Virus record (IMG/VR): IMGVR_UViG_3300027782_000027
Location: 176,760 to 240,759 of that record
Strand: one strand, 5' to 3'
Length of the DNA: 64,000 nt
Positions 26,708-63,172 of this stretch are shown one piece after another; within the stretch, counting starts at the first letter, position 1, and every line of letters begins with the position of its first letter. The translations under genes and the position numbers were made by a program. The notes under the pieces were generated by a model that saw only the letters and a program-made list of their open reading frames with translations, did no database searches and was not told the origin of the DNA.

Positions 26708-27302
26708 AATTAAAAAATATGGTAAGTTTTCTAATTTTGAAAAAAATAAAAAGAAAAAACAAATAATTCTTTGTAACAGTTTTAGACCACAAGGAGAATA
26801 TCTAAACTCTTTGAAATACCGTTTTAACGGTAACTACAAGAAAATTCCTAATTATTTAATAACCAAATCAGGGGTTGTGTTAAATTTTATATCAGACGAT
26901 TCTTATGGTGATTTTTTTTCAGAAAGTGAAGTAAATAAACATTCAATCGTGATTTGTTTAGAAAATTTAGGGTGGTTACAAAAAACACCGTTAGGTTTAT
27001 CTCATTCTAATTGGATTGGTGATATTTATAGTAAAGATATTTTTGAAAAAAAATGGAGAAGTAAAATTTTTTGGGAACCATATACTAAAGAACAAATAAA
27101 TTCACTGATAGAACTTTCAAAAAAACTCTTAAAGAAATTTTCAATAGACAACAAATTTATTGGACACAATACGAGAGTAGACGGTGTTAAATTATTTAAT
27201 GGAATTGTCTGTAGAAGTAATTTTAGTGATAAATTTTTGGATTTAAACCCATCATTTGAATATGAATATTTTAAAAAAGAGATAGAAAATTATGAGAGAT
27301 AA
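26700..27302 (+). CDS. Amidase_2-like (N-acetylmuramoyl-L-alanine amidase fold), probably degenerate
   Basis: QIILCNS, PNYLITKSG, SIVICLENLGW, YTKEQINSL, DLNPSF. Confidence 0.6.
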   Translation: MLEIKKYGKFSNFEKNKKKKQIILCNSFRPQGEYLNSLKYRFNGNYKKIPNYLITKSGVVLNFISDDSYGDFFSESEVNKHSIVICLENLGWLQKTPLGLSHSNWIGDIYSKDIFEKKWRSKIFWEPYTKEQINSLIELSKKLLKKFSIDNKFIGHNTRVDGVKLFNGIVCRSNFSDKFLDLNPSFEYEYFKKEIENYER

Positions 27303-27891
27303 CCAAGACATAAAAGACCAACTTAAAAAAGTTAGACAAATTCTTGAATCAAAAAATCAAATAGTTCAAGGACACATAAAGGAAATTAAGAAGTCGTATT
27401 TGATAACTGAAGAGGAAATTGAGGACAATAATATATCTACAAGATATAATGTCCCTAAATCTGTTGAGGACGATATTCAGGGGGATACGGACGAACCAAA
27501 TAAAGCTGAACAGGCATATAGAATATCTGGTGGTATATTAGTTATTCATGCTGAAACCATGAAAGATACCGAACTAACTACTGATGATAAAATGGCTTTT
27601 CAGGAGACTATGGATGAGTTTGTTAGTGAAGTTTCTGATTTAGTTAATTTCAATCAATTAAATGTTTATAAAGATAATGTTGATTGGAGTGGTAAAATTG
27701 TCGATTTTGATATTGATTTTTATTTTACTATCGGAGAAAATAATGGTTTATATATAACTTGTGATATGGTTAAAGTTGATGAAAATTTCACAGCGTCAAT
27801 GGATAAATTACAAACATTTTACGAAAAGTTCAAATCTAAATGGGCTAAAGTAATTGCTAGTAGAAAAAAAACAAAACCAATGGGAGTATGA
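27292..27891 (+). CDS. Hypothetical (probable virion) protein
   Basis: 199-aa ORF. Confidence 0.7.
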   Translation: MRDNQDIKDQLKKVRQILESKNQIVQGHIKEIKKSYLITEEEIEDNNISTRYNVPKSVEDDIQGDTDEPNKAEQAYRISGGILVIHAETMKDTELTTDDKMAFQETMDEFVSEVSDLVNFNQLNVYKDNVDWSGKIVDFDIDFYFTIGENNGLYITCDMVKVDENFTASMDKLQTFYEKFKSKWAKVIASRKKTKPMGV

Positions 27892-28226
27892 GTCAAAAAG
27901 TAATTATAATATTAGTTAGTATTTTAATTTTATTAGTTGGTTATAATACTATTATAACCACAAAGATTAAAACCGATGTTAAAAAATATCAAACATCAAT
28001 TGACAGTATACAAACAAAAATTGATTCTGTTAGTTTAATAAACAAAGAATTGGATTTAAAACTTGATTCATTAGATACGAATATCAATCATATTACCAAA
28101 GAAATCGATTTGGTTGATAATAACATAAATGTAATAAAAAAGAAAACAAATGAAAAAATTGTTGTTGTTGACCATTATGACAATGCTGAGCTTAATGGGT
28201 TTTTCTCAGGTAGGTACGGTAACTAA
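27888..28226 (+). CDS. TM-anchored coiled-coil protein (i-spanin-like)
   Basis: N-terminal TM helix plus heptads. Confidence 0.5.
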   Translation: MSQKVIIILVSILILLVGYNTIITTKIKTDVKKYQTSIDSIQTKIDSVSLINKELDLKLDSLDTNINHITKEIDLVDNNINVIKKKTNEKIVVVDHYDNAELNGFFSGRYGN

Positions 28227-28572
28227 AGATACAACTAAGGTTGTTATAAGTTCAGAAATTGCAAGACAAATTGCTAAAGATTTAATTAGATTAGATGGTT
28301 GTATTCAAGAAAATACCGAATTGTATACTAAGATATCAAAGATAGAAGATAGAGAAAAACAAAAAGACCAAAAGATTGAAATTTTACAAGAAAAAGATAA
28401 AAACAATCAAGTTATAATTGGTGAAAAAGATAAACAAATTGGTTTGTATGTTAATATGACTAACGATTTGAAAGATGAAATTAAAACCAATAATGATAAA
28501 ACTAAATGGTGGAAAGTCGGAACCTATACCGGTGGAGGATTAACACTTCTATTATTAATACTCGCATTTTAA
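28150..28572 (+). CDS. Signal-peptide coiled-coil protein with C-terminal TM (spanin-like partner)
   Basis: MKKLLLLTIMTMLSLMGFSQ; overlaps the previous gene by 77 nt. Confidence 0.5.
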   Translation: MKKLLLLTIMTMLSLMGFSQVGTVTKDTTKVVISSEIARQIAKDLIRLDGCIQENTELYTKISKIEDREKQKDQKIEILQEKDKNNQVIIGEKDKQIGLYVNMTNDLKDEIKTNNDKTKWWKVGTYTGGGLTLLLLILAF

Positions 28573-28573
28573 A

Positions 28574-28816
28574 ATGGCTTTTAATCAATCTGAAAAAAAC
28601 GAAATAGAAAAAATTGTCAAAAAAGAAATTAAATCTTTTTTAGATTCAAATACTATTAAACAATTTGAAGAAAAAATGATAGAATTATTATTAAAGGATA
28701 TTAAAAAGGGTAAATCTGAGAAAGAGATAAAAAATATAATTTCTAAGTCAATGATGGATTTCTACGAATATTTATGGTTTAATAAATCAACTTGGATGGA
28801 TAAAATTAAAAGGTAA
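28574..28816 (+). CDS. Hypothetical protein
   Basis: 80-aa ORF. Confidence 0.7.
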   Translation: MAFNQSEKNEIEKIVKKEIKSFLDSNTIKQFEEKMIELLLKDIKKGKSEKEIKNIISKSMMDFYEYLWFNKSTWMDKIKR

Positions 28817-28817
28817 T

Positions 28818-29366
28818 ATGGACATAAAAGATACGTTATTAAAATCTCTACAGAGTAAAATGCCAAGAGATACCGACTCTTTAAAAGATATGAATAGTTT
28901 TGCAACCAAGTTAAAAACTGAAAGTGAGGAGTTTGATGAGGCGACTGGTTCAGGTAGTACTGGTGGATATGTTGGTCCTTTATCTGAAGAAGAATATTGT
29001 GATGTTTGTGATAAAACTAAATCTGAATGTAGTTGTGATGAAATTAAAAAAGTTGAAGCAACTGAAGCAACAGGTTCTAGTTCGTCTGGTTCATATGAAG
29101 GTCCATCATTTTTAGCTAAATCACAAAAGAAAAAAGATTGGAGAGGAGCAGCAAAACCATTATATAAAGGTGGAAAGTTTGTGAAAATTAAAAAGAAATG
29201 TCAAAAGTTTCCATATTGTAATCAAGGGGATATTAACGCTCTTAAATTGACTGAACTTGATGTCTTTGAAAGTATTGTTAAAAAATTGGCATTGGAATAT
29301 AAAATAGACGAAAATCTAATTAAAAAATTAATCAAAGAAGATATTCTGAAAAACATGAATATCTGA
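28818..29366 (+). CDS. Hypothetical virion-type protein with repeated EATGS motifs
   Basis: EATGSGSTGGYVGP / EATGSSSSGSYEGP; CQKFPYCNQG. Confidence 0.7.
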   Translation: MDIKDTLLKSLQSKMPRDTDSLKDMNSFATKLKTESEEFDEATGSGSTGGYVGPLSEEEYCDVCDKTKSECSCDEIKKVEATEATGSSSSGSYEGPSFLAKSQKKKDWRGAAKPLYKGGKFVKIKKKCQKFPYCNQGDINALKLTELDVFESIVKKLALEYKIDENLIKKLIKEDILKNMNI

Positions 29367-29387
29367 ATATTTATATAGTAAAATACA

Positions 29388-30833
29388 ATGTTTGAATTTG
29401 ATAAAATAATTAAGGGTATCATTAGTGAAAGTTTATCTGAAAGAGCTGATGAACTTGCTGGACAGATTTTTAACAAAATTGAATCAAACGAAGACGTTGA
29501 TAAGTACGATTTAGAAGTAGGTACTGATTATGGTTTTGATGACGATGATGAGGATTACACGTTTATAAGAAGAGGTAAAATATCACCAGACGGACCATTC
29601 CATTTTAAAAGAAATAAACGAGGTGACGATGTTGCCTTTGGAGAAAAAAAAATAGCAAACATGAAAAAAAGAATTAAAGATGCAAGAAGTGAAACAACTG
29701 AAAGACTACATGGTGGTCAAAAAAAATTAGATGTTGCAGAACCTAAAGGTAAACTGACTAAAGCGGATTTTTTAAAATTACAAAAAATGGAAGAAGAAGT
29801 AGAAGAAGGAAACGCTTTTACTGGAGCTTTATCGAAGGCGAAAAAAGAAGGTAAAAAATCTTTTAAAGTTGATGGTAAAGAATTTGAAGTGACTGAAGAT
29901 TTAGGTGGTATGAGATTAGGTATGGGACACGATGACTTTGAAGATATGAATTTATCTGATGATGAAAACCCAAGAGTCCAATATTTGAAGAAAAAGTATA
30001 TGAGAAATTATCCTGAAGAGATTGACCAAGAAGTTGATTTTGTTTCAGGTGATGAAGAACCGGTTAATTATAGAATTAAGATGGGTGATGGTGATTTTCT
30101 TGATTTGGGTGAATCAGAATTGATTGATATGATTGAAGAACTTGTTACTGAAGAAAAGGTTAAGGATAATTTAAAGAAGACAGGTAAACCAGCTGGATTA
30201 GTTCAATATGATAGAGTTTCTAAAAAAGATAAAGAACAGAACTCAAAGGCTAATAAAGAATCATTTAAAAAGATGGCTGACTATGTTAAAGCAGGGTCTA
30301 AAGATACATTTAAATCTAATCCAGTAACGTTCCCAAAAGGTAATGGTGAACTTGCTAAAATGGATAAAAAGGCATATACAGCATCTGAGTATGTTGATGA
30401 GTATATAGATGCATTTGCGTATCCAGGACAAACTAACATAGTGTTTGATGAGATTAAACCTGATGATAAAAAAATTGAGATGTATCTTAAAGGTAATAGA
30501 CTAACAGGTAATGCTCAGGTTGATGACGAAGGTAATCCATTAGGTAATGTTGTTCCAAGTAAGTTAGGTGAGAAGATGTATAAGAACTACGAGGATAATT
30601 TATATGGTGCGGAACAATCAGAAGCTTCTTATAAGAGACAATCACAACCTGTTGATGTTGCCGGTGAAGTAACTCAAAAGGGTAAATTAAAAAGTAAAAA
30701 AAGTTCATCGGCGGCTAAGGCTCAAAAAGTTTTAGATAATGTTAGTGAATCAATATTTAATGAAAAAAGTTCACTTCTTAATGAAGAGATGGAAAACATG
30801 AAAAAGTTAATTGGTTATCAGTATAAAAAATAA
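29388..30833 (+). CDS. Probable internal head protein
   Basis: TATTTATA at 29368-29375; IIKGIISE leader; charged modules separated by Glu-containing linkers. Confidence 0.6.
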   Translation: MFEFDKIIKGIISESLSERADELAGQIFNKIESNEDVDKYDLEVGTDYGFDDDDEDYTFIRRGKISPDGPFHFKRNKRGDDVAFGEKKIANMKKRIKDARSETTERLHGGQKKLDVAEPKGKLTKADFLKLQKMEEEVEEGNAFTGALSKAKKEGKKSFKVDGKEFEVTEDLGGMRLGMGHDDFEDMNLSDDENPRVQYLKKKYMRNYPEEIDQEVDFVSGDEEPVNYRIKMGDGDFLDLGESELIDMIEELVTEEKVKDNLKKTGKPAGLVQYDRVSKKDKEQNSKANKESFKKMADYVKAGSKDTFKSNPVTFPKGNGELAKMDKKAYTASEYVDEYIDAFAYPGQTNIVFDEIKPDDKKIEMYLKGNRLTGNAQVDDEGNPLGNVVPSKLGEKMYKNYEDNLYGAEQSEASYKRQSQPVDVAGEVTQKGKLKSKKSSSAAKAQKVLDNVSESIFNEKSSLLNEEMENMKKLIGYQYKK

Positions 30834-33167: not shown

Positions 33168-34088
33168 TTGGAAAATTTTTATCAGATTTTAGATGTACCA
33201 GAAACTGCAAGTCAGGACGAAATAAAAAAAGCTTATAGGAAGAAAGCTGTGGAATCACACCCTGATAAGGGTGGTAATGAGGAAGTATTTAAAAAGATTT
33301 CAGAAGCTTATGATGTTCTAGGTAACGAGGATAAGAGAAGAAATTATGATAATAATAAGAATAATCCTTTTGGTGGTTTTGATGCTGACCCATTTAACAT
33401 GTTTCATGATTTCTTTAATAATATAAAACAAAATAAACCAAGAAAAGCTCCTGATAAAGTTGTTGAATTAAATATTGGAACTTTAGATTCTTATATTGGG
33501 AAGAATATCGATATTAATTTCAGTAGAAAAATTAATTGTAACACCTGTAATGGTAAAGGTGGTGATAGGGTCACATGTTCGAAATGTAATGGCTCAGGTA
33601 GAATAACCCAAAGAATTGGTAATTCGTTTTTCAGTAATATAGTACAGATGCCATGTGATGCTTGTTCAGGTCAAGGATTCAGTTTAAATAACGTTTGTTT
33701 TTCTTGTGCTGGTGAAGGTAAAAATAATGAGATGAAGTCAATTAATATTAATTTACCTCATGGTATTACTGATGGTCAGATGATAAAGGCGAAACAAATG
33801 GGAGATTATCATGAAGGAAGTTTTGGGGATATAATTTTTAAAATTAAGGTAAATCCTCAAGACGGTTTTGATAAGGTAAACAATGACTTAGTATACAATT
33901 ATCAAATGTCATTGGAAGATTTTAATAAAGATATGATTGACGTACCACACCCATCAGGTAACCTAAATATAAAATTACCTGAAGAGGTAGATACAACAAA
34001 ACCCCTACGTGTTAAAGGTAAGGGTTTTAGAAGTGAGGGTATTGGAGATTTTTATGTTAACATGTATGTTAAACATAAGAGAAGTTAG
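33168..34088 (+). CDS. dnaJ: Chaperone DnaJ
   Basis: J-domain HPD, four CxxCxGxG repeats, C-terminal domain; TTG start. Confidence 0.95.
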   Translation: MENFYQILDVPETASQDEIKKAYRKKAVESHPDKGGNEEVFKKISEAYDVLGNEDKRRNYDNNKNNPFGGFDADPFNMFHDFFNNIKQNKPRKAPDKVVELNIGTLDSYIGKNIDINFSRKINCNTCNGKGGDRVTCSKCNGSGRITQRIGNSFFSNIVQMPCDACSGQGFSLNNVCFSCAGEGKNNEMKSININLPHGITDGQMIKAKQMGDYHEGSFGDIIFKIKVNPQDGFDKVNNDLVYNYQMSLEDFNKDMIDVPHPSGNLNIKLPEEVDTTKPLRVKGKGFRSEGIGDFYVNMYVKHKRS

Positions 34089-41423: not shown

Positions 41424-41424
41424 T

Positions 41425-42144: not shown

Positions 42145-42145
42145 T

Positions 42146-43383: not shown

Positions 43384-43384
43384 T

Positions 43385-45673: not shown

Positions 45674-45684
45674 TATTTATAATT

Positions 45685-46071
45685 ATGAGACTTTTAAATT
45701 GTATCAAAAACATAATAAAGGAAGAAAGGATTGGAAAGCTTTTTGGTGACATTAAAGTTAAAGTATCTATTGAAACTTCATCACATGGTAATACCCAAAG
45801 GTTTAGACATGGTAAAGATGAAGTAATTACTAATGATGAAATATTAAGTGTGTTAAACTTAGGTCTACCTGAAATATTAGATGGTATTAAAGAAGGTGAG
45901 TTAGGACAAGACTCATCAATAGTAGTTTCACAAAAAGATTATCCGTTTTTAAATGTTGTTACCAATTTAGAAGAACAGGATTGTTATAATTTCCAAATCA
46001 ATATTGTTACTACCATCCGTAAGAAAAGATTTTACACAACTGGTAAAAACGATTTCCAAATTTACGTATAA
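45685..46071 (+). CDS. Hypothetical late protein
   Basis: TATTTATA at 45674-45681; IKNIIKEE leader. Confidence 0.7.
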   Translation: MRLLNCIKNIIKEERIGKLFGDIKVKVSIETSSHGNTQRFRHGKDEVITNDEILSVLNLGLPEILDGIKEGELGQDSSIVVSQKDYPFLNVVTNLEEQDCYNFQINIVTTIRKKRFYTTGKNDFQIYV

Positions 46072-47289: not shown

Positions 47290-47313
47290 TATATTTATAT
47301 AAAAACTTTAGAA

Positions 47314-48663
47314 ATGAAATTTACTAATATCTTAACAAACATTATTTTAGAAGATTCAAGATTTAACCTTCTATATGATAAATTAGTTGACAAGGGTGGT
47401 AGAAAACCTGAACCAGGTAAAATCCCTTTTGATACATTAAAGACTATTATCTTTGCTGACCCTACAACAAGAGCTCCGCAAAGTTTACTTCAAAATATTG
47501 AAACCTTAACACCTGAACAAATGGAAATTGTTAAGGTTGGTAAGTATACTAACTGGATATTAAAGAACTTCTTAAAACCAACATTTAGTGATGATTTTCG
47601 TGTTGAAGTTGGTTCACCTGAATATAAACAAGCGGTTAAAAGATATCGTGACTTATACCTTGAGGATTTATACAAGGTTACTGAAGATTTAAATAAGTTT
47701 GAAAGATTTAAAGGTCAACTAGAAGCTGACAAAAGAGATATTAATAAATTGACTATTGATTCGTTATTTGATGCAGTTAAGGACTTTAAGTTAGAAAAAA
47801 CAAAAGGAACAAAACAGGAAAAAGAAGAAGCTAAATCAACTTACCAATATCCTGGTTCAACTATTGCGTTTAAAGGGCCAAACTGGACTGTGGTTAAGAT
47901 TGAAGACCAAAGTGAACTTGGTAAAAACGCAGCTTGTTTCTTTGGTGGATATCATGAGCCGGACATGGGTGAAACAAGATGGTGTACATCATCACCTGGT
48001 TTATCTTACTTCAACACTTATATTAAACAAGGACCATTATATGTAATTCTACCTAATGACAGTTCTGATTTGGGTAAAAAGTCAGGTCTTCCTGTTGAAA
48101 GATATCAATGGCATTTTCAGTCTAATCAGTTTATGGACAGACAGGATAGAAATGTTAATATTGTTGAAATGTTACAAGGTAAGTTATCAGAACTTAAAGA
48201 ATTCTTCAAACCTGAATTTGCTAAAGGATTGGCTAAAGAAAATGGTAAGAGAGTTGATATTGTTTATCCTGAATCTTCGGCTGGTAAGTTCGTTGGATTG
48301 TATGGATTTAAAGAATTATTTGATAACCTACCAGATGACTTGGAGCAATTAATCATCCAAACTTCAAAAAACATTAAAGAAACAATTGCTCTTGAAGTTC
48401 CTGAAAGTATTGGAAGATTTGATAAGTTACAAACACTTTTATTAGGTGGTATGGTTAAATCTGTTCCTAATAGTATCTGTAATTTGACTAGTTTACTATT
48501 ACTTGCTTTACCAAACAACCCTCAGTTAACGACTATCCCAACTTGTGTTAAAGATTTACCTATGTTAGGTTTCTTGAATGTAAGTGGAAGTAATGTTAAA
48601 CTTCCTGAAGAACTTAAAGATGTTTTACATGAGGAAGGTGATGGTTATTATTATGTAGTTTAA
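47314..48663 (+). CDS. Late protein with TRWCTS domain and C-terminal leucine-rich repeats
   Basis: VPESIGRFDKLQTLLL, VPNSICNLTSLLLLAL, IPTCVKDLPMLGFLNV; TATTTATA at 47292. Confidence 0.75.
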   Translation: MKFTNILTNIILEDSRFNLLYDKLVDKGGRKPEPGKIPFDTLKTIIFADPTTRAPQSLLQNIETLTPEQMEIVKVGKYTNWILKNFLKPTFSDDFRVEVGSPEYKQAVKRYRDLYLEDLYKVTEDLNKFERFKGQLEADKRDINKLTIDSLFDAVKDFKLEKTKGTKQEKEEAKSTYQYPGSTIAFKGPNWTVVKIEDQSELGKNAACFFGGYHEPDMGETRWCTSSPGLSYFNTYIKQGPLYVILPNDSSDLGKKSGLPVERYQWHFQSNQFMDRQDRNVNIVEMLQGKLSELKEFFKPEFAKGLAKENGKRVDIVYPESSAGKFVGLYGFKELFDNLPDDLEQLIIQTSKNIKETIALEVPESIGRFDKLQTLLLGGMVKSVPNSICNLTSLLLLALPNNPQLTTIPTCVKDLPMLGFLNVSGSNVKLPEELKDVLHEEGDGYYYVV

Positions 48664-53030: not shown

Positions 53031-53787
53031 ATTAATATTAGGAGAATGTATTGAGGAAATGAAAAAATTAGAAAAAGAATCTATTGATATGATTCTTTGT
53101 GATTTACCATATGGTACAACACAGTGTAGTTGGGATAGTGTAATTCCGTTTAAAGATTTGTGGGAACAATATGAAAGAATTATAAAACCAAATGGTGCAA
53201 TTGTTTTAACTGCTGCTCAACCTTTTACCTCTAATTTGGTTATGTCTAACACCAAATTATTTAGATATTCTTTAGTTTGGGAAAAATCTAAATCCACAGG
53301 GTATTTGAATAGTAAGAAAATGCCAATGAGAGCCCATGAGGATGTGTTAGTTTTTTATAAAAAATTACCAACTTATAACCCTCAAAAGGTACAAGGGACC
53401 CCTTATGATAAAGGTATTGCTCATAGACCAACAGAAGTTTATCGAGAACAAAAAGGTGAGATACATGTTAAAAATGAAAACGGATTAAGATATCCTAGGT
53501 CGGTACAATACTTTAAAACCGCAGAATCTGAAGGTAAAGTATATCACCCAACACAAAAACCAATTTCAATGTTCGAATGGTTGATTAAAACATATTCAAA
53601 TGAGGGTGATGTGATATTAGATAATTGTTTAGGCGCTGGTACAACGGCAATTGCTGCAATAAGAACTAATCGAAAATATATTGGTATTGAGATTAGTGAA
53701 GAATATTACAATATATCACTTGAAAGATTAAATAATGAAACAAAAGACATCAACAAAGCTGTTGGAATTATCAAAAATATTTTGTAG
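53020..53787 (+). CDS. N4-C/N6-A DNA methyltransferase (beta class)
   Basis: CDLPYG, HPTQKP, VILDNCLGAGTT, YIGIE. Confidence 0.9.
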   Translation: MESKLILGECIEEMKKLEKESIDMILCDLPYGTTQCSWDSVIPFKDLWEQYERIIKPNGAIVLTAAQPFTSNLVMSNTKLFRYSLVWEKSKSTGYLNSKKMPMRAHEDVLVFYKKLPTYNPQKVQGTPYDKGIAHRPTEVYREQKGEIHVKNENGLRYPRSVQYFKTAESEGKVYHPTQKPISMFEWLIKTYSNEGDVILDNCLGAGTTAIAAIRTNRKYIGIEISEEYYNISLERLNNETKDINKAVGIIKNIL

Positions 53788-55003: not shown

Positions 55004-56116
55004 TTAGAAATAACTATTAAACTCAATATTGAGACATTTTGTAACGTCGCTGAAATCGGGGTAGTCAGGGGTTCTTCCAGAACTCAACCAACTTAAGTCA
55101 CCACTTTCAAATAAACTTTTAAGTAGGTTGATATAACCTCCGTAATAATTTAAATTTTCATATGGGTTATTTACGTTACTTTCAAACCAAAGTTTAATAT
55201 TATAATGTGCAGTTTTTGTAACTTCATATCTTACGCCATATCTTTCTGTTGATGTACTTTTATTGTAATCGTATTTTTTGTATTTATAATCTTCAGCTTT
55301 TTTATTATCAATAACCTCACCGACTAATTGTCCTATAAGTGAGTCATACAATTCGTTAACGTAAACCGACCCATAACAATTTGAGTATAATGAATATAAT
55401 TCACTTCTTATATCTAATCCTAAGTTCATTATAAAGTATTCAACGCAATCATTATCTTGTAAAAGTTTAGTGATTATCTCTTCATTTAATTTTAAATTCG
55501 ACTCATCACCTTGTTCTTTTGCTAAATCTTCTATTAATCCAGGAGTTTCATAACTGATAGATAAATTACCAATTTTAAGTAAATCTTCTTTGATGTATCC
55601 TCTAATTTCTTCTTGGTATTTTGGCTCTAGTTCTTCATAAATATCTTTGAACTCATCACCTGTTACGTCATCATAAAGATAACCATCATAATCCCCATTT
55701 AATATTTCGGCGATTCTGTCTTCACTAATATCGTTTCTACCACTACTAAAGAATTGTGCCAGTTCACCGGAATCTTGTAAATCAACATAATATTTCCCAT
55801 CAATCTCAGTTATATCTGAAAATTCCATTTCCATCATCTTATAGATGTAATTTGGGTCTTTTTGTATAAATTGATAAATTATTTTATTTTGATAATCAGA
55901 CCAATCATTATTAAAAGGGTCAATGTAATGTGATAAATTATATTTAATTATTAACTCAAAAAATTTATCAAAACTACCTATGGTGTTTTCAATATCCTCC
56001 TCAGTAACATCTCCGTTTTGGAATAGAGTAATAAGTTTTACTAACTTATTTTGGAAACCTGTTAATACGGGTTTTTCCTCTTCTTCGTTTAATTTTTTGA
56101 AAATTTTAAATTCCAT
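55004..56116 (-). CDS. Acidic late protein
   Basis: TATTTATA at 56120-56127 (minus); KKLNEEEE leader. Confidence 0.75.
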   Translation of the reverse strand: MEFKIFKKLNEEEEKPVLTGFQNKLVKLITLFQNGDVTEEDIENTIGSFDKFFELIIKYNLSHYIDPFNNDWSDYQNKIIYQFIQKDPNYIYKMMEMEFSDITEIDGKYYVDLQDSGELAQFFSSGRNDISEDRIAEILNGDYDGYLYDDVTGDEFKDIYEELEPKYQEEIRGYIKEDLLKIGNLSISYETPGLIEDLAKEQGDESNLKLNEEIITKLLQDNDCVEYFIMNLGLDIRSELYSLYSNCYGSVYVNELYDSLIGQLVGEVIDNKKAEDYKYKKYDYNKSTSTERYGVRYEVTKTAHYNIKLWFESNVNNPYENLNYYGGYINLLKSLFESGDLSWLSSGRTPDYPDFSDVTKCLNIEFNSYF

Positions 56117-56128
56117 AATTATAAATAT

Positions 56129-56370: not shown

Positions 56371-56460
56371 ATTGTTGGTATTTTATTATAAATATTTACC
56401 ACATGTGATTTAATAGTAAATAATATAGTTATTTTAATATTTATTAATATAATTTTTATC

Positions 56461-57759
56461 ATGAGAGTTAATATAGATATATCACAAATACAAAAGGTTG
56501 TTCAGATGTTGGTTGAGGAAGAAGGACAAGAGAGTGTTGTTATAACACCTGAGCAATATATTGACTTATTAAAGTTTACTGACTATAACGGTAAATTGGT
56601 TCAAAATATGAAACAATTCAGAGGTAAAAGGATTGTTATTGATGGTAATTTAAGTCTGAGAGGAACGGATGCCAACAATATCACAAATATCACAGTTAAT
56701 GGTGGTTTAGATTTAACATATACCAAAATTAATTCTATTGAGGGGATTGAAGCCAAATCTATTTCAACATATGGTACACCATATGAACAAATTCAAATCA
56801 AAAAACAAAGACAGATTGAATTTGAAAAACAAAACGTTTTACGACAAGAGGATGAGTGGAATTTAGAAACTGCAACTAGTGAGATTGCGATTTTGGCAAA
56901 TGTTTTATTTGAATTTTTGACTTCATCTTCTGGTGATTATGAGGCTAAAGAACCTAATCATGATGCAAGGTTACAGGAACTTTATACTGCAAAAGAAAGA
57001 ATGGAGGAAATTGAGAAAGAAACAGAAGATAATGAAAATCTGATGGATTTAGAAGCGGTTGAAGAAGAAATTGAAGAACTTGAAAAAAGAATTGACTTAT
57101 ATAATTTGGTTTATGATTACAAATATTATAGTATGAGAACTTTTTATTTGTTAACTGACGAATTAGAAGAATCAAAAGAAAGATGGGCGGTTGGTGATAA
57201 TTATAGAACCCACATGTCGGCATATGAAAGAATTGATGAATTGATTGATGATATCGGAATAAAAGGTTTTAATTCAAGTTTTGTTGAAGATTATATTGAT
57301 ATTGAAGAACTTAAGGAAACTTTTAGAGACGATGAAGAAAATAATGTTAGAGAAAACCTTGAAGACTTTTTTGACGAGGAAGATTTTGAATATTCAGACC
57401 CAGCAGTTCAAGAAAGAATTGATGAAATTGAATTGTTTTTGGAAGATTCTGAAATAGACCAAGAAAAAGAAGATGAATTAAATGAAGAACTTGATGAGTT
57501 AAGAGATAGTGATAAAACTGTCCCTGAAAATTTAATTGAGGAAAAGGTTGAAGATTTAATTAATGATTTGGTTGATGACCCTGCGAACGTAATTGAAGAA
57601 TATGGTTTGAATATTGAAAACTTTATAGATATAAAAGGTTTTAAAGAAGGGTTAGTTGAAACTGACGGTATTGGTCACACACTGAACTCTTACGATGGTG
57701 ATTACGATACTATTGAATTTAATGATGAAACATATTACATTTTACAAATAGAAGGGTAA
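56461..57759 (+). CDS. Highly acidic late protein with short LRR-like N-terminal region
   Basis: GNLSLRGT/GGLDLTYTKI; D/E-rich C-terminal half; TATTTAT at 56438. Confidence 0.75.
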   Translation: MRVNIDISQIQKVVQMLVEEEGQESVVITPEQYIDLLKFTDYNGKLVQNMKQFRGKRIVIDGNLSLRGTDANNITNITVNGGLDLTYTKINSIEGIEAKSISTYGTPYEQIQIKKQRQIEFEKQNVLRQEDEWNLETATSEIAILANVLFEFLTSSSGDYEAKEPNHDARLQELYTAKERMEEIEKETEDNENLMDLEAVEEEIEELEKRIDLYNLVYDYKYYSMRTFYLLTDELEESKERWAVGDNYRTHMSAYERIDELIDDIGIKGFNSSFVEDYIDIEELKETFRDDEENNVRENLEDFFDEEDFEYSDPAVQERIDEIELFLEDSEIDQEKEDELNEELDELRDSDKTVPENLIEEKVEDLINDLVDDPANVIEEYGLNIENFIDIKGFKEGLVETDGIGHTLNSYDGDYDTIEFNDETYYILQIEG

Positions 57760-58522: not shown

Positions 58523-58534
58523 TACTTTTGTAAT

Positions 58535-59076: not shown

Positions 59077-59941
59077 AATTACTGTTATTGGTATATCATC
59101 TGATAACATTGAAAATGTATTTAATGGTTGGGAATATACTTACATAGTTAAAGATTTATTAGCGAATTTTGAAGTTGACCTAAAGTTAATTTCAGATAAA
59201 TTAGATTTGTTTTGTGACAATTGTTTAATAATTTATTCATGTGATGAAAGAAATATTCCTGATAATTTACTTGAATATTTTACTGAGTATAAAAATAGAA
59301 ATCTTGATTTTAATCTTTTTCACATATCAAACGAACAACTAAGACATGATACAAGTTATTATAAATTGGCTAAAAATGTTTTTAGAAATTATTTTGACCC
59401 GTCAATAACTTTAAATAATGTTTTAACTTTACCTTTAGGTTATAAAAATGGGTTTTTTAATCCGAGTTTAACATTTAAAAAAATTGAAGATAAAAAATTT
59501 GATAGTTGTTTTGTTGGACAATTAAAACACGATAGAATTAATGTTGTTCACGAAATTAGTAATTTAGATAAAAAATTTATACACATTACACAACAATGGG
59601 ATTGTCCAACATCTCTCCCTTCGGAAGCAGTTTTTAAGATTTATCAAGATACTCTTTTAATTCCGTGTCCAATTGGTAATGTTAATCAAGACTCGTTCAG
59701 AATTTGTGAGATTTTGGAATCCGGCTCAATACCTTTAATTAAAATTTATTTCCAAGAAGATTATTTTAAACATATTTTTGGAGAACACCCAATACCAACT
59801 GTTAGAGATTGGAATGAAATACCTAAAATATTAAAAGATATTAAAAATAATAGTAACGAAAAAATTTTAGAAATTAATGAGTGGTATAAAAAATTCAAAG
59901 AAGAACTAAGAACTAAAATTTTTAATATATTAAATAAATGA
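59066..59941 (+). CDS. Exostosin/GT47-like glycosyltransferase
   Basis: LPLGY, FVGQ, PCPIGNVNQDSFRICEILESGSIP. Confidence 0.65.
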   Translation: MKSKITVIGISSDNIENVFNGWEYTYIVKDLLANFEVDLKLISDKLDLFCDNCLIIYSCDERNIPDNLLEYFTEYKNRNLDFNLFHISNEQLRHDTSYYKLAKNVFRNYFDPSITLNNVLTLPLGYKNGFFNPSLTFKKIEDKKFDSCFVGQLKHDRINVVHEISNLDKKFIHITQQWDCPTSLPSEAVFKIYQDTLLIPCPIGNVNQDSFRICEILESGSIPLIKIYFQEDYFKHIFGEHPIPTVRDWNEIPKILKDIKNNSNEKILEINEWYKKFKEELRTKIFNILNK

Positions 59942-60795
59942 TAGAAAATTATATTAACAAAGTCCTTAATGGTGATACCATTGACGTGATGAGCGAAATG
60001 CCCGAAGGATGGGTTGACCTAGTTGTTACATCGCCTCCATATAATGTGGGTATCCAATACGACACACATAACGATGAGATTGTTATGGATGAATATTGGG
60101 AGTGGTCTGAAAAATGGTTGACAGAAGTATACCGTCTACTTAAAGACGATGGAAGAATTGCTATTAACATACCATATGAGGTGAATGTACAAGCCCGTGG
60201 TGGTAGAGTATTCTTCGCTTCAGAAATATATCAGGTGATGAAAAAAGTTGGGTTTAAGTTCTACGGTATTGTTGACCTTGAAGAAGACTCACCACATAGA
60301 AGTAAGACAACTGCTTGGGGTTCTTGGATGAGTCCATCATCTCCTTACATTTACAACCCAAAAGAATGTGTCATCTTGGCTTATAAAAAAGTTCACATCA
60401 AGAAAGTTAAGGGTGAACCACAATGGAAAGGTGAACCTTATCTAACTGAAGAGGGGAAGAACAAAGTTGCTTATTCTGAACAAGATAAGAAAGAGTTTAT
60501 GGAATTGGTGTTTGGACAATGGAAATACTTTGCCGATACCCGTTCATTAACAAAGGCGACGTTCTCCATGGATATTCCCGAAAAGGCAATCAAGATATTG
60601 TCATACAGAAATGATGTGGTATTAGACCCCTTTAATGGTTCAGGTACCAGTTGTGTGGCAGCAGTTGTTCATGACAGACGATGGGTTGGTATTGAATTAA
60701 GTGAAAACTATTGTGAAATTGCTAAACAACGAATACAAAGTTTTGTTGACCAAAAGAGCCAACAGAAGTTACAATTTGAAAACGGAGTCCAATAA
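59938..60795 (+). CDS. N4-C/N6-A DNA methyltransferase (beta class)
   Basis: VTSPPYN, VLDPFNGSGTS, VGIEL. Confidence 0.9.
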   Translation: MIENYINKVLNGDTIDVMSEMPEGWVDLVVTSPPYNVGIQYDTHNDEIVMDEYWEWSEKWLTEVYRLLKDDGRIAINIPYEVNVQARGGRVFFASEIYQVMKKVGFKFYGIVDLEEDSPHRSKTTAWGSWMSPSSPYIYNPKECVILAYKKVHIKKVKGEPQWKGEPYLTEEGKNKVAYSEQDKKEFMELVFGQWKYFADTRSLTKATFSMDIPEKAIKILSYRNDVVLDPFNGSGTSCVAAVVHDRRWVGIELSENYCEIAKQRIQSFVDQKSQQKLQFENGVQ

Positions 60796-60808
60796 ACTCC
60801 GTTTTTTT
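60779..60808 (+). terminator. Intrinsic terminator
   Basis: aaaacggagt-ccaataa-actccgtttt-ttt. Confidence 0.85.
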
Positions 60809-60840
60809 ATTTATTTGTATATTTATAATTAAATGTTATT

Positions 60841-61212: not shown

Positions 61213-61234
61213 AGGTATATTACTTTTTTACTTT

Positions 61235-61267
61235 AAAAGGTTCATCGTAATGATGAACTTTTTTTTT
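61235..61267 (+). terminator. Intrinsic terminator
   Basis: aaaaggttcatc-gtaat-gatgaactttt followed by a T-run. Confidence 0.85.
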
Positions 61268-61286
61268 GTTATAATATTTATTATTA

Positions 61287-62687
61287 ATGAAAAAGATAAT
61301 TTCTGAAGGTGGTATTAGAAACATAAAAGAACTTTCTAATAGATACAGCAAAGCGAAGATATACTTTCACCAAGATTTAGATGGTGTTGCAACTGCATTA
61401 GCAATGAAAAAGTATTTGGAAGACAATGGAATTAAAGTTGTTGATGTTGAAGTAATCCAATACGGAGATAAAGAATTTGCGGTTAAGAAGGCGGATGCTG
61501 AAGGTGAAATTATGCCAGTTCTTGTTGACTTTGCTCACGGAAAACCAATGTTCGTAGTTCACACCGACCACCACGATAGACAAGCCGGAGCTGACGAAAC
61601 TAAATCAACTCAGTTCAGAGGAGCTCGTTCTAATGTTGAAACACTTTCACAGATTGTTCCGGCATCTGAAATTTTTACACCGGAAGATGTTGCGACAATA
61701 TCTATGGTTGATAGTGCTGATTATGCTTCTAAAAACATTACACCTGAAATGGTAATGAATTATGTATACGGAACGTCAAAAGAAAAAAGTGCTAAAGAAA
61801 ATAGAATGTTATTAGGTTTGGTTACTAACAAGTTATTGTTGGCGTTTAAGAACAAACCCGGATTTTTAGAGACATTAGTGTTAGATTGTAAACCTTCAAT
61901 CCTTTCAATCTTTAATAAGATAAAAGAGTTGATGAAGACAAATAGATATGCTGACATATCTTCATTAGAAAAAAACAAAGAAGATTATGTTCAGACAATG
62001 AAAGGACATAAGAATGTTCAGGTTAAAGATAATATCATTGTTCAATACGGTGGTGGAAGTATGATGAAACCTGGCTCATATGATAGATATACCCCATTTA
62101 GAAACAACCCTGAGGCAGACTTTCTTGTAATTGCTTGGCCACTTGGTTTATTACAGGCATCGTGTAACCCTTTTAAAAAAGAAAGAGAACTTAAAGGTGT
62201 TAACTTGGGAGAAATTGCTCAAGAAGTATTGGGACATTGGGAATCACAATTAAAAGAAAAACAAGTTCCACTATCAACAATTAAATGGGTTTCTGAAACT
62301 GCTGCAAAAGAAGAATCAGTTGGATTTACCTTTAAGGATTTTGCTGCAATATACGGAGACAAGTACTTGGATGAGAAAGATGGTGTTAAAACACTTATGG
62401 ATATTAAATCTTTGATGGAAAAGAAATCAACTGAACTGACTGAAGAAGAATGGAGTGTTTTAGATGGTGTTACTGTCCCTGTATGGGAAGTTATTCAAGC
62501 AAATTCAGGTGGACACAAGTGTATTACAAATGTATCTGGTTTAAACTATATTGGAAGAAGTAAAAGACCACCACAAGGTAAGTACAAGTACGACTCTGAA
62601 AAAGATGATTCACCTTATATTAAATTCTTAAAGATGTTACAGAATAAATTTGTAAATGTCTTACAAGAAAAGATTAATCAAAAATGA
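61287..62687 (+). CDS. DHH-like phosphoesterase
   Basis: YFHQDLDG, LVDFA, TDHHD, SGGH; TATTTAT at 61275. Confidence 0.7.
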   Translation: MKKIISEGGIRNIKELSNRYSKAKIYFHQDLDGVATALAMKKYLEDNGIKVVDVEVIQYGDKEFAVKKADAEGEIMPVLVDFAHGKPMFVVHTDHHDRQAGADETKSTQFRGARSNVETLSQIVPASEIFTPEDVATISMVDSADYASKNITPEMVMNYVYGTSKEKSAKENRMLLGLVTNKLLLAFKNKPGFLETLVLDCKPSILSIFNKIKELMKTNRYADISSLEKNKEDYVQTMKGHKNVQVKDNIIVQYGGGSMMKPGSYDRYTPFRNNPEADFLVIAWPLGLLQASCNPFKKERELKGVNLGEIAQEVLGHWESQLKEKQVPLSTIKWVSETAAKEESVGFTFKDFAAIYGDKYLDEKDGVKTLMDIKSLMEKKSTELTEEEWSVLDGVTVPVWEVIQANSGGHKCITNVSGLNYIGRSKRPPQGKYKYDSEKDDSPYIKFLKMLQNKFVNVLQEKINQK

Positions 62688-63172
62688 GAATAGTTGAAGA
62701 AATTAGTAAGATAAAAAAATTAATGTTTGAAAATCAAACTAATTTTAATTTTGGATATCAAGGGGACATTGGAGAGAAACCAGGGTTACATATCTACATA
62801 TCTGATGACGAAAAAATTGGACATTCTAATTTACTTAATTTTTATGATTCTTGGGATTTTGATATGGATGTAGAAAGATTTTATAATAATCCACAATATT
62901 GTGTTGATGGTTGTGATGACGGATTCTTCAACCAAAAAAATACAGTATATCTACATGACTTAAAAGTTTCCCCAAAATATCAAGGTAATGGGTATAGTAA
63001 GTTACTAATGAATAAATCACATGAAATTGCTAAAAATCTAGGATTTGATTATGTTAGTTTGATTACATCTAGAAATAATGAACCCGCTCAAAATTTGTAT
63101 AAAAAATTAGGTTATAAATTACACCAAACTGATGATAATAAAGATTTTTATTATTATAATTTAAACAAATGA
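62684..63172 (+). CDS. GNAT acetyltransferase
   Basis: LKVSPKYQGNGYSKLL, NEPAQNLYKKLGY. Confidence 0.85.
   Translation: MRIVEEISKIKKLMFENQTNFNFGYQGDIGEKPGLHIYISDDEKIGHSNLLNFYDSWDFDMDVERFYNNPQYCVDGCDDGFFNQKNTVYLHDLKVSPKYQGNGYSKLLMNKSHEIAKNLGFDYVSLITSRNNEPAQNLYKKLGYKLHQTDDNKDFYYYNLNK

What the first reader, a model, noticed from the sequence alone, without database searches (positions are those of the whole stretch)
27292..63172. Shared N-terminal leader on diverse late proteins: possible capsid-targeting and co-injection system
Seen: unrelated proteins start with an amphipathic Lys/Ile segment ending (I/L)-x-E: MFEFDKIIKGIISE (29388), MRLLNCIKNIIKEE (45685), MKFTNILTNIILED (47314, LRR), MEFKIFKKLNEE (56116), ..KVVQMLVEEE (56461), MKKIISEGG (61287, DHH-like), MRIVEEISKIKKLMFE (62684, GNAT), ..KKVRQILES (27292). 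Six of these sit directly behind TATTTAT promoters. EEISKIKKLM recurs as EEMENMKKLI at the end of 29388, and 28818/29388 contain repeated E-delimited modules. Established: T4 internal proteins use a short N-terminal capsid-targeting sequence removed by the prohead protease after (I/L)-x-E. Inference: a portable tag loads enzymes (phosphoesterase, acetyltransferase, LRR and acidic proteins) into the head for injection, for example as anti-defence effectors.
Basis: partly seen in the sequence, partly recalled or inferred. Interest (0 to 1): 0.72.

Follow-up and report, generated by a model that had tools for sequence, protein, structure and literature searches.

The report
Portable N-terminal leader on phage late proteins

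Summary
The window is the last 64 kb of a 240.8-kb IMG/VR contig. The phage has a T4-type head module: gp20 portal, an S77 gp21-type prohead protease, and gp23 capsid protein.

A stricter leader is real:
- h-[polar]-[polar]-h-h-x-E is 17 times more frequent at N-termini than inside proteins (25 observed, 1.95 in shuffles).
- Its Glu falls at residue 7, 13/14 or 22.
- It recurs in a complete relative, G003.
- It sits on about 40 ORFs, mostly outside the window.

The clearest form, MKKIVRLTESDLxxIVKRVIxE, was confirmed at 469 IMG/VR loci. In the 80 loci kept it always lies at the start codon, on 52 unrelated cargo groups, and 62 of 80 have TATTTAT upstream. It is almost absent from cellular genomes.

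The same promoter motif precedes the terminase, portal, protease, scaffold, sheath and tube genes.

Status of the eight named ORFs:
- Credible: 29388, 45685, 47314.
- Plausible: 56461, 61287, 62684.
- Doubtful: 56116.
- Unsupported: 27292.

Capsid targeting with cleavage after Glu is the best-fitting mechanism, but it is inferred, not shown. No cultured relative or virion proteome was found.

The parts
29388..30833 (+). 481-aa ORF, no Pfam or PHROG hit. 14-aa leader (29388-29429) ending I-S-E. TATTTAT at 29368-29374. Conserved C-terminal motif at 30783-30818.
   Evidence: PSSM 14.5 bits, p per position 3e-5. Four orthologues keep K-[IV]-[IL]-x-E at the same place, the upstream TATTTAT and the C-terminal motif. 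Promoter position.
45685..46071 (+). 128-aa ORF, no family hit. 13-aa leader (45685-45723) ending I-K-E. TATTTAT at 45674-45680, 4 nt before the ATG.
   Evidence: PSSM 12.7 bits. Top non-member hit of the class A leader HMM, but E = 0.14, not significant alone. The G003 orthologue keeps L-I-T-E at residue 13.
47314..48663 (+). 449-aa protein with C-terminal leucine-rich repeats. 13-aa N-terminal segment (47314-47352) ending I-L-E. TATTTAT at 47292-47298.
   Evidence: LRR: Pfam LRR_14 4.6e-6 and PDB LRR proteins 1.7e-9. It matches the strict regex but not the PSSM. In 17 distinct N-termini of about 120 homologues, [LI]-I-[LV]-E at residues 10-13 is conserved and E13 is invariant.
56461..57759 (+). 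432-aa very acidic protein (net charge about -76), possibly LRR-like. Weak leader (56461-56520). TATTTAT at 56438-56444.
   Evidence: PSSM only 4.1 bits. The G003 orthologue has a clear K-K-I-L-K-S-I-I-S-E at residues 6-15. Atlas neighbours carry LRR or Recep_L families, which is a lead only. Charge.
61287..62687 (+). 466-aa DHH/DHHA1-fold phosphoesterase. 7-aa N-terminal segment MKKIISE (61287-61307). TATTTAT at 61275-61281.
   Evidence: Pfam DHH only 0.0033. The AF2 model (pTM 0.74) matches only DHH-family structures: RecJ, GdpP, NrnA. The N-terminus M-[KR]-x-h-h-x-E-[SG]-G is conserved in about 110 homologues with x variable. Residues 1-10 are unstructured in the model, pLDDT 32.
62684..63172 (+). 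162-aa GNAT acetyltransferase. Its first 16 aa (62684-62731) resemble the 'class D' leader (E-I-x-K-I-K-x-L-M). Its start overlaps the stop of 61287. No TATTTAT of its own.
   Evidence: Acetyltransf_1 3.3e-14. Motif comparison. PSSM 7.2 bits. A host-type TAnnTTTG lies 31 nt upstream. No orthologue in G003.
55004..56116 (-). 370-aa ORF. TATTTAT at 56121-56127 on the minus strand. N-terminus MEFKIFKKLNEE: doubtful leader.
   Evidence: PSSM 10.7 bits. The G003 orthologue has a different, longer N-terminus, and the alignment starts at residue 47.
27292..27891 (+). Not supported as a leader protein.
   Evidence: No TATTTAT. Not among the top PSSM scores. Fails the strict regex. The orthologue N-terminus is only loosely similar.
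28818..29366 (+). 182-aa ORF with a leader-like motif N-L-I-K-K-L-I-K-E-D eight residues before its C-terminus (about 29313-29342) and two copies of a Ser/Gly-rich S-G-x-Y-x-G-P element.
   Evidence: Internal regex hit. Class A HMM weak hit at residues 166-175. Repeat element seen.
26700..27302 (+). Amidase_2 protein, the likely endolysin of a lysis cassette (followed by membrane and lipoprotein ORFs at 27888-28572). It has no leader and serves as an internal contrast.
   Evidence: Pfam Amidase_2 4.9e-9. N-terminus lacks the motif.

Best explanation
The window holds a handful of members of a clade-wide set of phage genes. Each starts, right behind a TATTTAT-type phage promoter, with a short portable leader peptide. 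The leader is an amphipathic stretch that ends in two hydrophobic residues, a variable residue and an invariant Glu at residue 7, 13/14 or 22.

The most likely function is that of T4's capsid-targeting sequences. The leader docks the newly made protein onto the scaffolding core of the prohead. The phage's gp21-type (Peptidase_S77) protease then cuts after the Glu, and the cargo stays in the head for delivery with the DNA.

Shown here:
- The leader exists and is N-terminal.
- It is under protein-level selection.
- Its cargo is diverse.
- It shares a promoter motif with the head and tail genes.
- It co-occurs with the S77 protease.

Inferred only: docking, cleavage, packaging, injection, and any anti-defence role.
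For: Lineage:
- Portal_T4 255 bits, Peptidase_S77 93 bits, Gp23 245 bits.
- The protease aligns to T4 gp21 (5JBL) at 8.5e-18 and keeps the ELNHP and SSRG motifs.

The leader is real:
- 17-fold N-terminal enrichment.
- 25 observed against 1.95 in shuffles.
- Glu positions quantised at 7, 13/14 and 22 in both G000 and G003.
- Replicated in G003, with an 11-fold enrichment.

The leader is portable:
- Similarity among the 10 class A proteins is mostly confined to residues 1-25.
- Conservation stops at the invariant E22, after a variable residue 21.
- In 80 IMG/VR loci, 80 start at Met, 79 have no upstream in-frame ATG, and the cargo falls into 52 BLAST-unrelated groups.

Selection acts on the protein, not the DNA:
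- Codon identity at identical residues is 64%, against 51% expected from codon usage.

Co-expression with virion genes:
- TATTTAT precedes the terminase, portal, protease, scaffold, sheath, tube and baseplate-region genes and nearly all leader genes.
- 28 of 84 motif-bearing ORFs have a leader, against 16 of 194 without the motif and 1 of 29 with only a host-type promoter.
- 62 of 80 loci in relatives have the motif.

Co-occurrence and specificity:
- 16 of 17 large leader-bearing contigs encode S77, including 5 of 5 complete ones.
- Each complete relative carries 7-17 class A leader genes.
- Only 5 hits appear in 185,579 cellular genomes, all in MAGs and mostly on short contigs.

Substrate-like context:
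- The capsid protein region that roughly corresponds to the T4 gp23 maturation site holds conserved L-K-E, L-Y-E and I-N-E.
- The putative scaffold N-terminus is dense in conserved h-x-E.
- The protease has I-L-I-E at residues 16-19.
- The 432-aa ORF next to the terminase starts with a leader ending R-I-N-E followed by A-P. Its G003 orthologue reads MKTYKKRINE, against the T4 CTS MKTYQEFIAE (PMC8442874).

Structure models:
- In a class A protein the leader is a low-confidence helix (residues 9-21), there is a break at 22-26, and the confident domain starts at about residue 40.
- Residues 1-10 of the DHH protein are conserved yet unstructured.

Cargo:
- Two extra peptidoglycan hydrolases (a lysozyme fusion and an amidase) carry leaders, while the lysis-cassette amidase does not.

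T4 precedent: PMC9026906, PMC5694885, PMC3012670.
Against: - There is no direct evidence of packaging or cleavage. No cultured relative or virion proteome exists.
- The complex prediction of protease plus leader gave no answer.
- About 40 tagged ORFs is far more than T4's handful of CTS proteins.
- The promoter motif also precedes a DnaB-like helicase, so it may not be strictly late.
- The 7-residue form also matches a head-tail adaptor-like protein that need not be a protease substrate.
- In 29388 and 47314 the conserved region runs on past the Glu, so their N-termini could simply be part of the folded protein.
- 61287 and 47314 are highly conserved core genes rather than the variable cargo typical of T4 internal proteins.
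- Window proteins are individually weak against the class A HMM (E = 0.14 and 1.6).
- Paralogy inflates the counts.
- ORF starts come from a crude caller that uses ATG only and keeps the longest ORF.
Confidence: 0.5

Rival explanations
1. The leader is a real shared module, but it is a docking helix for some other late process. Candidates are binding a common assembly chaperone, another virion site or a host target, or driving oligomerisation. In this reading it is neither cleaved nor used for head packaging.
For: - It forms an amphipathic helix.
- It is conserved on unrelated cargo.
- In some families conservation continues past the Glu.
- The phage encodes its own full-length DnaJ at window 33168-34088.
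- About 40 cargo proteins is many for a capsid interior.
- Nothing shows cleavage.
Against: - The only invariant C-terminal feature is h-h-x-E with a variable x, followed by an immediate loss of conservation. That is what a T4-type cleavage site looks like.
- The linker after it varies freely in length.
- The leader is tied to genomes with an S77 protease.
Confidence: 0.27
2. The resemblance among the reader's eight window N-termini is mostly composition. AT-rich, often leaderless late mRNAs favour Lys/Ile/Leu-rich starts, and (I/L)-x-E is common by chance, so there is no shared function in the window.
For: - The loose motif is not significant in the window (18 against 13.4, P = 0.067).
- K, I and L are 1.5-1.8 times enriched in residues 2-15 of all ORFs.
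- The loose motif is also present on the terminase, an RNR subunit, methylases and thioredoxin.
- 27292, 56116 and 56461 score at or near noise, or lose the motif in orthologues.
- TATTTAT lies 4-8 nt from many start codons, which suggests leaderless transcripts.
Against: - The strict motif beats a composition-preserving shuffle in the window (4 against 0.34) and genome-wide (25 against 1.95).
- The Glu sits at fixed positions in two genomes.
- Orthologues at 30-55% identity keep it.
- Class A conservation over 22 residues with free synonymous change cannot be explained by composition.
Confidence: 0.15
3. Promoter plus leader is a DNA-level recombination cassette that captures and shuffles genes, as the promoter-stem-loop cassettes of T4-type phages do. 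The peptide itself would be a passenger.
For: - Promoter and leader travel together in front of unrelated ORFs, clustered in a variable region.
- In G003 a fused G000 gene is split into two genes, each with its own leader.
Against: - Codons vary almost as freely as codon usage allows while the residues are kept.
- Promoter-to-ATG spacing and spacer sequence differ between copies, from 4 to 45 nt.
- The leader is kept at about 70-90% amino-acid identity across hundreds of divergent contigs.
Confidence: 0.05

Closest known systems
Phage T4 capsid-targeting sequence (CTS) of internal proteins IPI, IPII, IPIII and Alt, removed by the gp21 prohead protease
   Same: - Same head lineage: gp20 portal, gp21-type S77 protease, gp23 capsid protein.
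- A short N-terminal propeptide-like leader (7-22 aa here; 10-20 aa in T4) shared by otherwise unrelated proteins.
- The leader ends in (L/I)-x-E.
- The promoter motif is shared with the head genes.
- Some cargo are enzymes, as Alt is in T4.
   Different: - No sequence homology to MKTYQEFIAE. The only resemblance in form is one orthologue that starts MKTYKKRINE.
- At least four leader classes with quantised lengths.
- About 40 tagged ORFs per genome instead of about four.
- A 22-aa form that is far more strongly conserved than the T4 CTS.
- Some tagged proteins are conserved core genes.
- No experimental evidence at all.
Propeptides of ejection and inner-body proteins in phiKZ-like giant phages (phiKZ gp175, 201phi2-1, SPN3US gp245 substrates)
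   Same: - Many head proteins are processed after Glu by a gp21-related protease.
- Paralogues can share an identical N-terminal stretch while the rest diverges (PMC5694885).
- The genomes are large, with many packaged proteins.
   Different: - Those proteases use (S/A/G)-x-E or A-x-E, and the propeptides are often longer than 100 aa.
- Here the motif is hydrophobic-hydrophobic-x-E, as in T4, and the leaders are short.
- No phiKZ-type virion RNA polymerase or nucleus genes were looked for or seen.
Hyperplastic internal-protein loci of T-even phages, where only the CTS is conserved among diverse injected anti-restriction proteins such as IPI*
   Same: Clusters of small, fast-changing ORFs that keep only the leader. 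This fits an arms-race role for the cargo.
   Different: - The scale: tens of genes, and at least 52 cargo groups in the 80 loci sampled.
- The probable host group (Bacteroidota-type promoters and signal peptides).
- No cargo function is known.

Membership tests
T4-type capsid-targeting (CTS) / internal-protein system | The genome encodes a gp21-family (Peptidase_S77) prohead protease together with a T4-type portal and gp23 capsid protein. | tested here: met
   PF03420 93 bits, PF07230 255 bits, PF07068 245 bits. T4 gp21 5JBL at 8.5e-18, with the ELNHP and SSRG motifs kept.
T4-type capsid-targeting (CTS) / internal-protein system | A short N-terminal leader (about 10-20 aa) ending in (L/I)-x-E. 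| tested here: met
   Leaders of 7, 13/14 and 22 aa ending h-h-x-E, significant against shuffles and seen in two genomes. In the window the leader is clear for 29388, 45685 and 47314, and weaker for the others.
T4-type capsid-targeting (CTS) / internal-protein system | The same leader sits on otherwise unrelated proteins. | tested here: met
   Similarity among class A proteins is mostly confined to residues 1-25. There are 52 unrelated cargo groups among 80 loci.
T4-type capsid-targeting (CTS) / internal-protein system | The tagged proteins are expressed together with the head proteins. | tested here: inconclusive
   The TATTTAT motif is shared with the head and tail genes. It also precedes a DnaB-like helicase. 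No expression data were examined.
T4-type capsid-targeting (CTS) / internal-protein system | Sequence homology of the leader to the T4 CTS MKTYQEFIAE. | tested here: not met
   Leader classes A-D do not resemble it. Only the G003 orthologue of the ORF next to the terminase (MKTYKKRINE) looks alike, which could be chance (PMC8442874).
T4-type capsid-targeting (CTS) / internal-protein system | The leader is cleaved after Glu by the prohead protease. | not testable with these tools
   The complex prediction gave no answer. This needs N-terminomics or an in vitro cleavage assay.
T4-type capsid-targeting (CTS) / internal-protein system | The cargo is present inside the mature head, and the leader alone is enough for packaging. 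| not testable with these tools
   No cultured relative or virion proteome was found.
DHH/DHHA1 phosphoesterases (for ORF 61287) | A DHH plus DHHA1 two-domain fold with the DHH motifs. | tested here: met
   Pfam is weak (0.0033). All top Foldseek PDB hits are DHH-family proteins such as RecJ, GdpP and NrnA, with probability about 1. H28, D30, D32 and D94-H95-H96-D97 are invariant in 37 homologues.
GNAT acetyltransferases (for ORF 62684) | An Acetyltransf_1 domain above the Pfam threshold. | tested here: met
   53.6 bits against a cut-off of 20.7. PHROG acetyltransferase families also hit.
Leucine-rich repeat proteins (for ORF 47314) | LRR units detectable by sequence. | tested here: met
   Residues about 320-440 match solved LRR proteins at 1.7e-9. 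Pfam LRR_14 scores 4.6e-6, below its cut-off. Many homologues carry PF23598.

The most novel reading that the evidence does not exclude
An uncultured clade of T4-related jumbo phages, probably infecting Bacteroidota, may have turned the T4 capsid-targeting trick into a general cargo-loading system. It would use a family of leaders with quantised lengths (7, 13/14 and 22 aa) behind one promoter type, tagging about 15% of the genes. The tagged proteins include enzymes (PPK2-lysozyme, amidase, superoxide dismutase, a DHH phosphoesterase, perhaps a GNAT), LRR proteins and dozens of small orphan proteins. All would be packed into the head and injected with the DNA.
Probability: 0.4. Interest if true: 0.78.

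Novelty: new variant of a known kind. Interest (0 to 1): 0.62.

Why it matters
If the leaders are capsid-targeting propeptides, the injected proteome of a whole uncultured phage clade could be read from sequence alone. That proteome would be hundreds of cargo families, a ready list of candidate first-strike effectors such as anti-defence proteins, cell-wall hydrolases and metabolic enzymes.

It would also supply well-defined natural packaging tags of three lengths for protein delivery by phage capsids. And it would show that the T4 internal-protein strategy can scale to tens of cargo proteins per virion.

Even if the mechanism is different, a 22-residue peptide kept at 70-90% identity on at least 52 unrelated proteins, at 469 confirmed viral loci and essentially nowhere in cellular genomes, is an unexplained and testable sorting signal.

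Tried and rejected
- Rfam and tRNA scans of the window found nothing.
- Megablast of 20 kb against GenBank phages found nothing.
- tblastn of a class A leader and of a class B protein against GenBank phages found nothing. The ORF next to the terminase hit only two uncultured huge phages. No isolate with a virion proteome is therefore available.
- Literature searches for the motif strings, and for capsid targeting in jumbo phages, gave only the T4 and SPN3US background.
- The complex prediction of protease plus leader peptide scored 0.00, which is no answer and was not used as evidence.
- The class A HMM does not reach significance on window proteins (45685 at E = 0.14; 29388 at E = 1.6). The visual resemblance of the capsid protein N-terminus to the leader is not significant either (E = 5.6) and is mentioned only as a lead.
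- The 'E-delimited modules' in 28818/29388 were rejected: their site density is ordinary.
- The PDB sequence search did not support DHH for 61287, but the fold search did.
- Atlas searches of 29388 and 56461 returned only unnamed viral clusters.
- A double-glycine bacteriocin-type leader was considered because of the L-[ST]-x-x-[ED]-L-x-x-I pattern. It was rejected: there is no conserved Gly-Gly, the cargo reaches 600 aa, and the genes sit in a phage late-gene context.
- Sec, Tat and SAR signals were rejected because the leaders are charged amphipathic segments, not hydrophobic ones.
- One call failed through my own slip, a reference that was too short.

Full report
**What the sequence is.**
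The window is bases 176,760-240,759, the last 64 kb, of a 240,759-bp IMG/VR viral contig (G000). The contig is linear and about 82% complete. It is AT-rich, about 30% GC, apart from the first 10 kb of the window.

I laid out the whole contig and called 278 ORFs with a crude caller that uses ATG starts only and keeps the longest non-overlapping ORFs.

At genome 60-71 kb lies a T4-type head module:
- large terminase;
- gp20-type portal (PF07230, 255 bits);
- gp21-type prohead protease (Peptidase_S77, 93 bits);
- an acidic scaffold-like protein;
- gp23-type major capsid protein (245 bits).

The protease aligns to T4 gp21 (PDB 5JBL) at 8.5e-18 and keeps the ELNHP and SSRG motifs. The nearest capsid proteins in GenBank are about 42-44% identical: Flavobacterium phage immuto, a Microcystis phage and uncultured huge phages.

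Two features suggest a Bacteroidota host, but that is inference from my own knowledge:
- host-type TAnnTTTG promoter motifs;
- signal peptides ending SFSQ or SNAQ.

**Checking the observation.**
All eight N-termini are as quoted.

- It occurs in 37% of all ORFs, against 20% of internal 20-mers.
- N-termini are generally Lys/Ile/Leu-rich here. When residues 2-20 of each ORF are shuffled, the window count is 18 of 50 against 13.4 +/- 2.7 expected (P = 0.067).
- It is also found on the terminase, a ribonucleotide reductase subunit, methylases and thioredoxin.

Reading all N-termini nevertheless exposed a much stronger pattern, mostly outside the window. Three main leader classes appear, plus a fourth:
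- Class A: MKK[IV]VRLTESDLxxIVKRVIxE, on 10 genes.
- Class B: MKY[LI]ITES[QK]L, on 15 genes.
- Class C: six variable residues and then IKK[VI]L[KR]E, with the Glu at residue 13 or 14. It is on about 10 genes, including window ORFs 29388, 45685 and 47314.
- Class D: a 7-residue start followed by E-[IV]-x-[KR]-[IM]-K-x-[IL]-M-G. It is on at least two large proteins, and the GNAT at 62684 and the C-terminus of 29388 resemble it.

The statistics for a strict motif are clear:
- A 7-residue regex (hydrophobic, two polar, two hydrophobic, any residue, Glu) hits 29 sites ending by residue 30 and 18 internal sites. That is a 17-fold higher rate per position at N-termini.
- Counted per ORF it gives 25 against 1.95 in composition-preserving shuffles. 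It gives 15 against 1.72 without class A, and 4 against 0.34 for the window alone.
- The Glu of h-h-x-E piles up at residues 7, 13/14 and 22. This holds in G000 and independently in G003, a complete 293,850-bp relative that I assembled from fetched pieces.

**Which window proteins belong.**
I built a scoring matrix (PSSM) from 17 out-of-window leader cores and scored the named ORFs:
- 29388 scores 14.5 bits and 45685 scores 12.7 bits. Both have per-position p of about 3-5e-5.
- 56116(-) scores 10.7 bits and 62684 scores 7.2 bits.
- 56461 scores 4.1 bits, which is noise.
- 47314, 61287 and 27292 are not among the top 60.

Orthologues add information:
- Four relatives keep K-[IV]-[IL]-x-E at the start of the 29388 family, together with the upstream promoter motif and the C-terminal motif.
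- The 45685 orthologue keeps L-I-T-E at residue 13.
- The 56461 orthologue has a much clearer K-K-I-L-K-S-I-I-S-E.
- The 56116 orthologue has an unrelated, longer N-terminus.
- 62684 has no orthologue in G003.

Two window proteins are widely conserved:
- 47314 has thousands of homologues. In 17 distinct N-termini, [LI]-I-[LV]-E at residues 10-13 is conserved and E13 is invariant.
- 61287 also has thousands of homologues. Its start is M-[KR]-x-h-h-x-E-[SG]-G, with only the x free to vary. In an AlphaFold model with pTM 0.74, residues 1-10 are the least confident part (pLDDT 32) and have no secondary structure. That is what a linear motif would look like.

My grading of the eight ORFs:
- 29388, 45685 and 47314 are credible.
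- 56461, 61287 and 62684 are plausible.
- 56116 is doubtful.
- 27292 is unsupported.

- GNAT for 62684.
- LRR for the C-terminal part of 47314.
- DHH/DHHA1 fold for 61287.

**The leader is portable and under protein-level selection.**
- Among the ten class A proteins, BLAST similarity is mostly confined to residues 1-25.
- A database search restricted to the first 40 residues found the same leader on dozens of unrelated small metagenomic proteins. In a few it is repeated internally or at the C-terminus.
- In an alignment of 24 leaders, M1, K3, R6, L7, E9, L12, K17 and E22 are invariant and residue 21 is variable. Conservation ends at E22.
- Codons at identical residues match in 64% of pairs, against 51% expected from codon usage. 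The peptide, not the DNA, is conserved.
- In IMG/VR at least 590 stretches matched the search patterns and 469 were confirmed.
- In the 80 loci kept, all start at Met, 79 have no upstream in-frame ATG, and 62 have TATTTAT within 60 nt. The cargo falls into 52 BLAST-unrelated groups with a median length of 146 aa.
- Five complete relatives carry 7-17 class A genes each.
- The same scan over one genome for each of 185,579 prokaryotic species found 5 hits, all in MAGs and mostly on contigs of 1-4 kb.
- Linker length after the leader is free. One orthologue pair differs by 66 residues between the leader and the conserved domain.
- A PPK2-lysozyme fusion in G000 is two genes in G003, each with its own leader.

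**The promoter.**
ATATTTAT is 19-fold enriched upstream of ORFs. The core TATTTAT lies 4-18 nt before the start codons of two sets of genes:
- the terminase, portal, protease, scaffold, tail sheath, tail tube and baseplate-region genes;
- nearly all leader genes.

A leader motif is present in:
- 28 of 84 ORFs that have the promoter motif;
- 16 of 194 ORFs without it;
- 1 of 29 ORFs that have only a host-type TAnnTTTG motif.

One caveat: a DnaB-like helicase also has the motif. 'Late' is therefore an inference from the company it keeps.

**Mechanism.**
The established T4 precedent has four parts:
- The internal proteins and Alt carry 10-20-residue N-terminal capsid-targeting sequences that bind the scaffolding core.
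- gp21 removes these sequences after Glu.
- The sequences are enough to carry foreign proteins into the head.
- Internal-protein loci vary between T-even phages, with only the CTS conserved (PMC9026906, PMC5694885, PMC3012670, PMC8442874).

Everything I could test here fits that model:
- The protease family is right, and the leader's length and position fit.
- The leader ends in h-h-x-E with a variable x, and conservation drops sharply after it.
- The cargo is unrelated, the promoter is shared with head genes, and the leader co-occurs with S77 in 16 of 17 large contigs, including 5 of 5 complete ones.

Expected protease substrates also show the same kind of site:
- The capsid protein N-terminus aligns roughly with the T4 gp23 propeptide region. 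Query residues 72-105 align with T4 residues 93-126, which places the T4 cut at about residue 45-60 here. That stretch holds conserved L-K-E, L-Y-E and I-N-E.
- The scaffold N-terminus is dense in conserved h-x-E.
- The protease has I-L-I-E at residues 16-19, paralleling the LIE-9 noted for T4 gp21 in PMC9026906.
- The 432-aa acidic ORF beside the terminase starts with a 16-residue leader ending R-I-N-E followed by A-P. Its G003 orthologue reads MKTYKKRINE, which is striking next to T4's MKTYQEFIAE but could be chance.

Further support:
- A model of a class A protein shows a low-confidence helix at residues 9-21, a break at 22-26, and a confident domain from about residue 40.
- Leader-bearing enzymes outside the window include PPK2 fused to a phage lysozyme, an Amidase_2 protein, and an Fe/Mn superoxide dismutase with a conserved extension of about 35 residues.
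- The lysis-cassette amidase in the window (26700) has no leader.

**What remains unshown.**
Packaging, cleavage, injection and any anti-defence role are all untested.
- The one structural test I could run, protease plus leader peptide, returned no answer.
- No cultured relative exists in the collections searched.
- About 40 tagged ORFs is many.
- Some tagged proteins, the DHH and LRR proteins, are conserved core genes rather than variable cargo.
- The 7-residue form also matches a head-tail adaptor-like protein.
- In 29388 and 47314 the conserved segment runs on past the Glu.

I put the capsid-targeting reading at about 0.5. A non-cleaved docking helix for another late function gets about 0.27. 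A DNA cassette with a passenger peptide gets about 0.05.

**Novelty.**
The kind is known: T4 CTS, and phiKZ/SPN3US propeptides. I found no description of this leader family in the literature searched, and its carriers have no Pfam assignment on record. Its scale, its quantised lengths and its strong conservation across hundreds of uncultured phage contigs make it a new variant worth an experiment.

Noticed in passing
window 1-6326 (genome 168785-183085): The window opens inside a 4,766-aa ORF that is 45% Ser, 31% Gly and 12% Thr. It is essentially (G-S-S / G-T-S)n triplets, collagen-like, with a globular N-terminal part that is related to neighbouring fibre-like ORFs. It explains the 45-48% GC and strong GC skew of the first 10 kb, against about 30% elsewhere.
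   Followed up: partly
whole genome; in the window e.g. 45674-45684, 56117-56127, 61275-61286: The distance from TATTTAT to the ATG appears bimodal, about 4-8 nt and about 12-18 nt, judged by eye from the list. The short class would give leaderless or nearly leaderless mRNAs if the motif acts as a -10 element.
   Followed up: no
window 34550-45517: An 11-kb island of sugar and methyl transfer genes: a GT1 + FkbM methyltransferase + DegT aminotransferase fusion (866 aa), FkbM methyltransferase, hexapeptide acyltransferase, GT2, FtsJ-like methyltransferase, and GT1/GT9 (710 aa). None has a leader or its own TATTTAT. This may reflect glycan modification of virion or host surface.
   Followed up: partly
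L003:10908-12695 (genome 28908-30695): A 595-aa protein joins a class D leader, a polyphosphate kinase 2 domain (238 bits) and a phage lysozyme domain. In relative G003 the two halves are separate adjacent genes, each with its own leader.
   Followed up: partly
L007:17623-19128 minus strand (genome 107623-109128): An Fe/Mn superoxide dismutase with a conserved N-terminal extension of about 35 aa that contains h-x-E sites, plus a 275-aa C-terminal extension that the G003 orthologue lacks. It lies behind a TATTTAT motif.
   Followed up: partly
window 33168-34088: A full-length DnaJ (J domain, Cys-rich zinc-finger domain and C-terminal domain) encoded by the phage.
   Followed up: no
window 26700-28572: A probable lysis cassette: an Amidase_2 endolysin, a small membrane protein (27888) and a lipoprotein-like ORF with a Bacteroidota-style signal peptide (28150).
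   Followed up: no
window 28818-29366 and its G003 orthologue; also genome 71212-71949: A short Ser/Gly-rich element, S-G-x-Y-x-[GAP]-P, recurs twice in 28818 and twice in its G003 orthologue. It occurs once in the G003 orthologue of the ORF after the capsid gene, and the G000 copy of that ORF has only a looser form (G-G-T-Y-K-P-P). Its meaning is unknown.
   Followed up: partly
window 46450-47289, 53020-53787, 59938-60795: Three DNA methyltransferases: one Dam-like (D12 class) and two of the N6/N4 type. With thioredoxin, glutaredoxin, NUDIX, DUF932 and DUF192 genes, this shows that the right half of the window mixes non-structural genes with the leader-bearing ones.
   Followed up: no
P0010, P0011, P0013, P0014 (metagenomic proteins): A few metagenomic proteins carry a second class A leader internally or at the very C-terminus. 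This may reflect fused genes or polyproteins with internal processing sites. Some may be gene calls truncated at contig ends.
   Followed up: no
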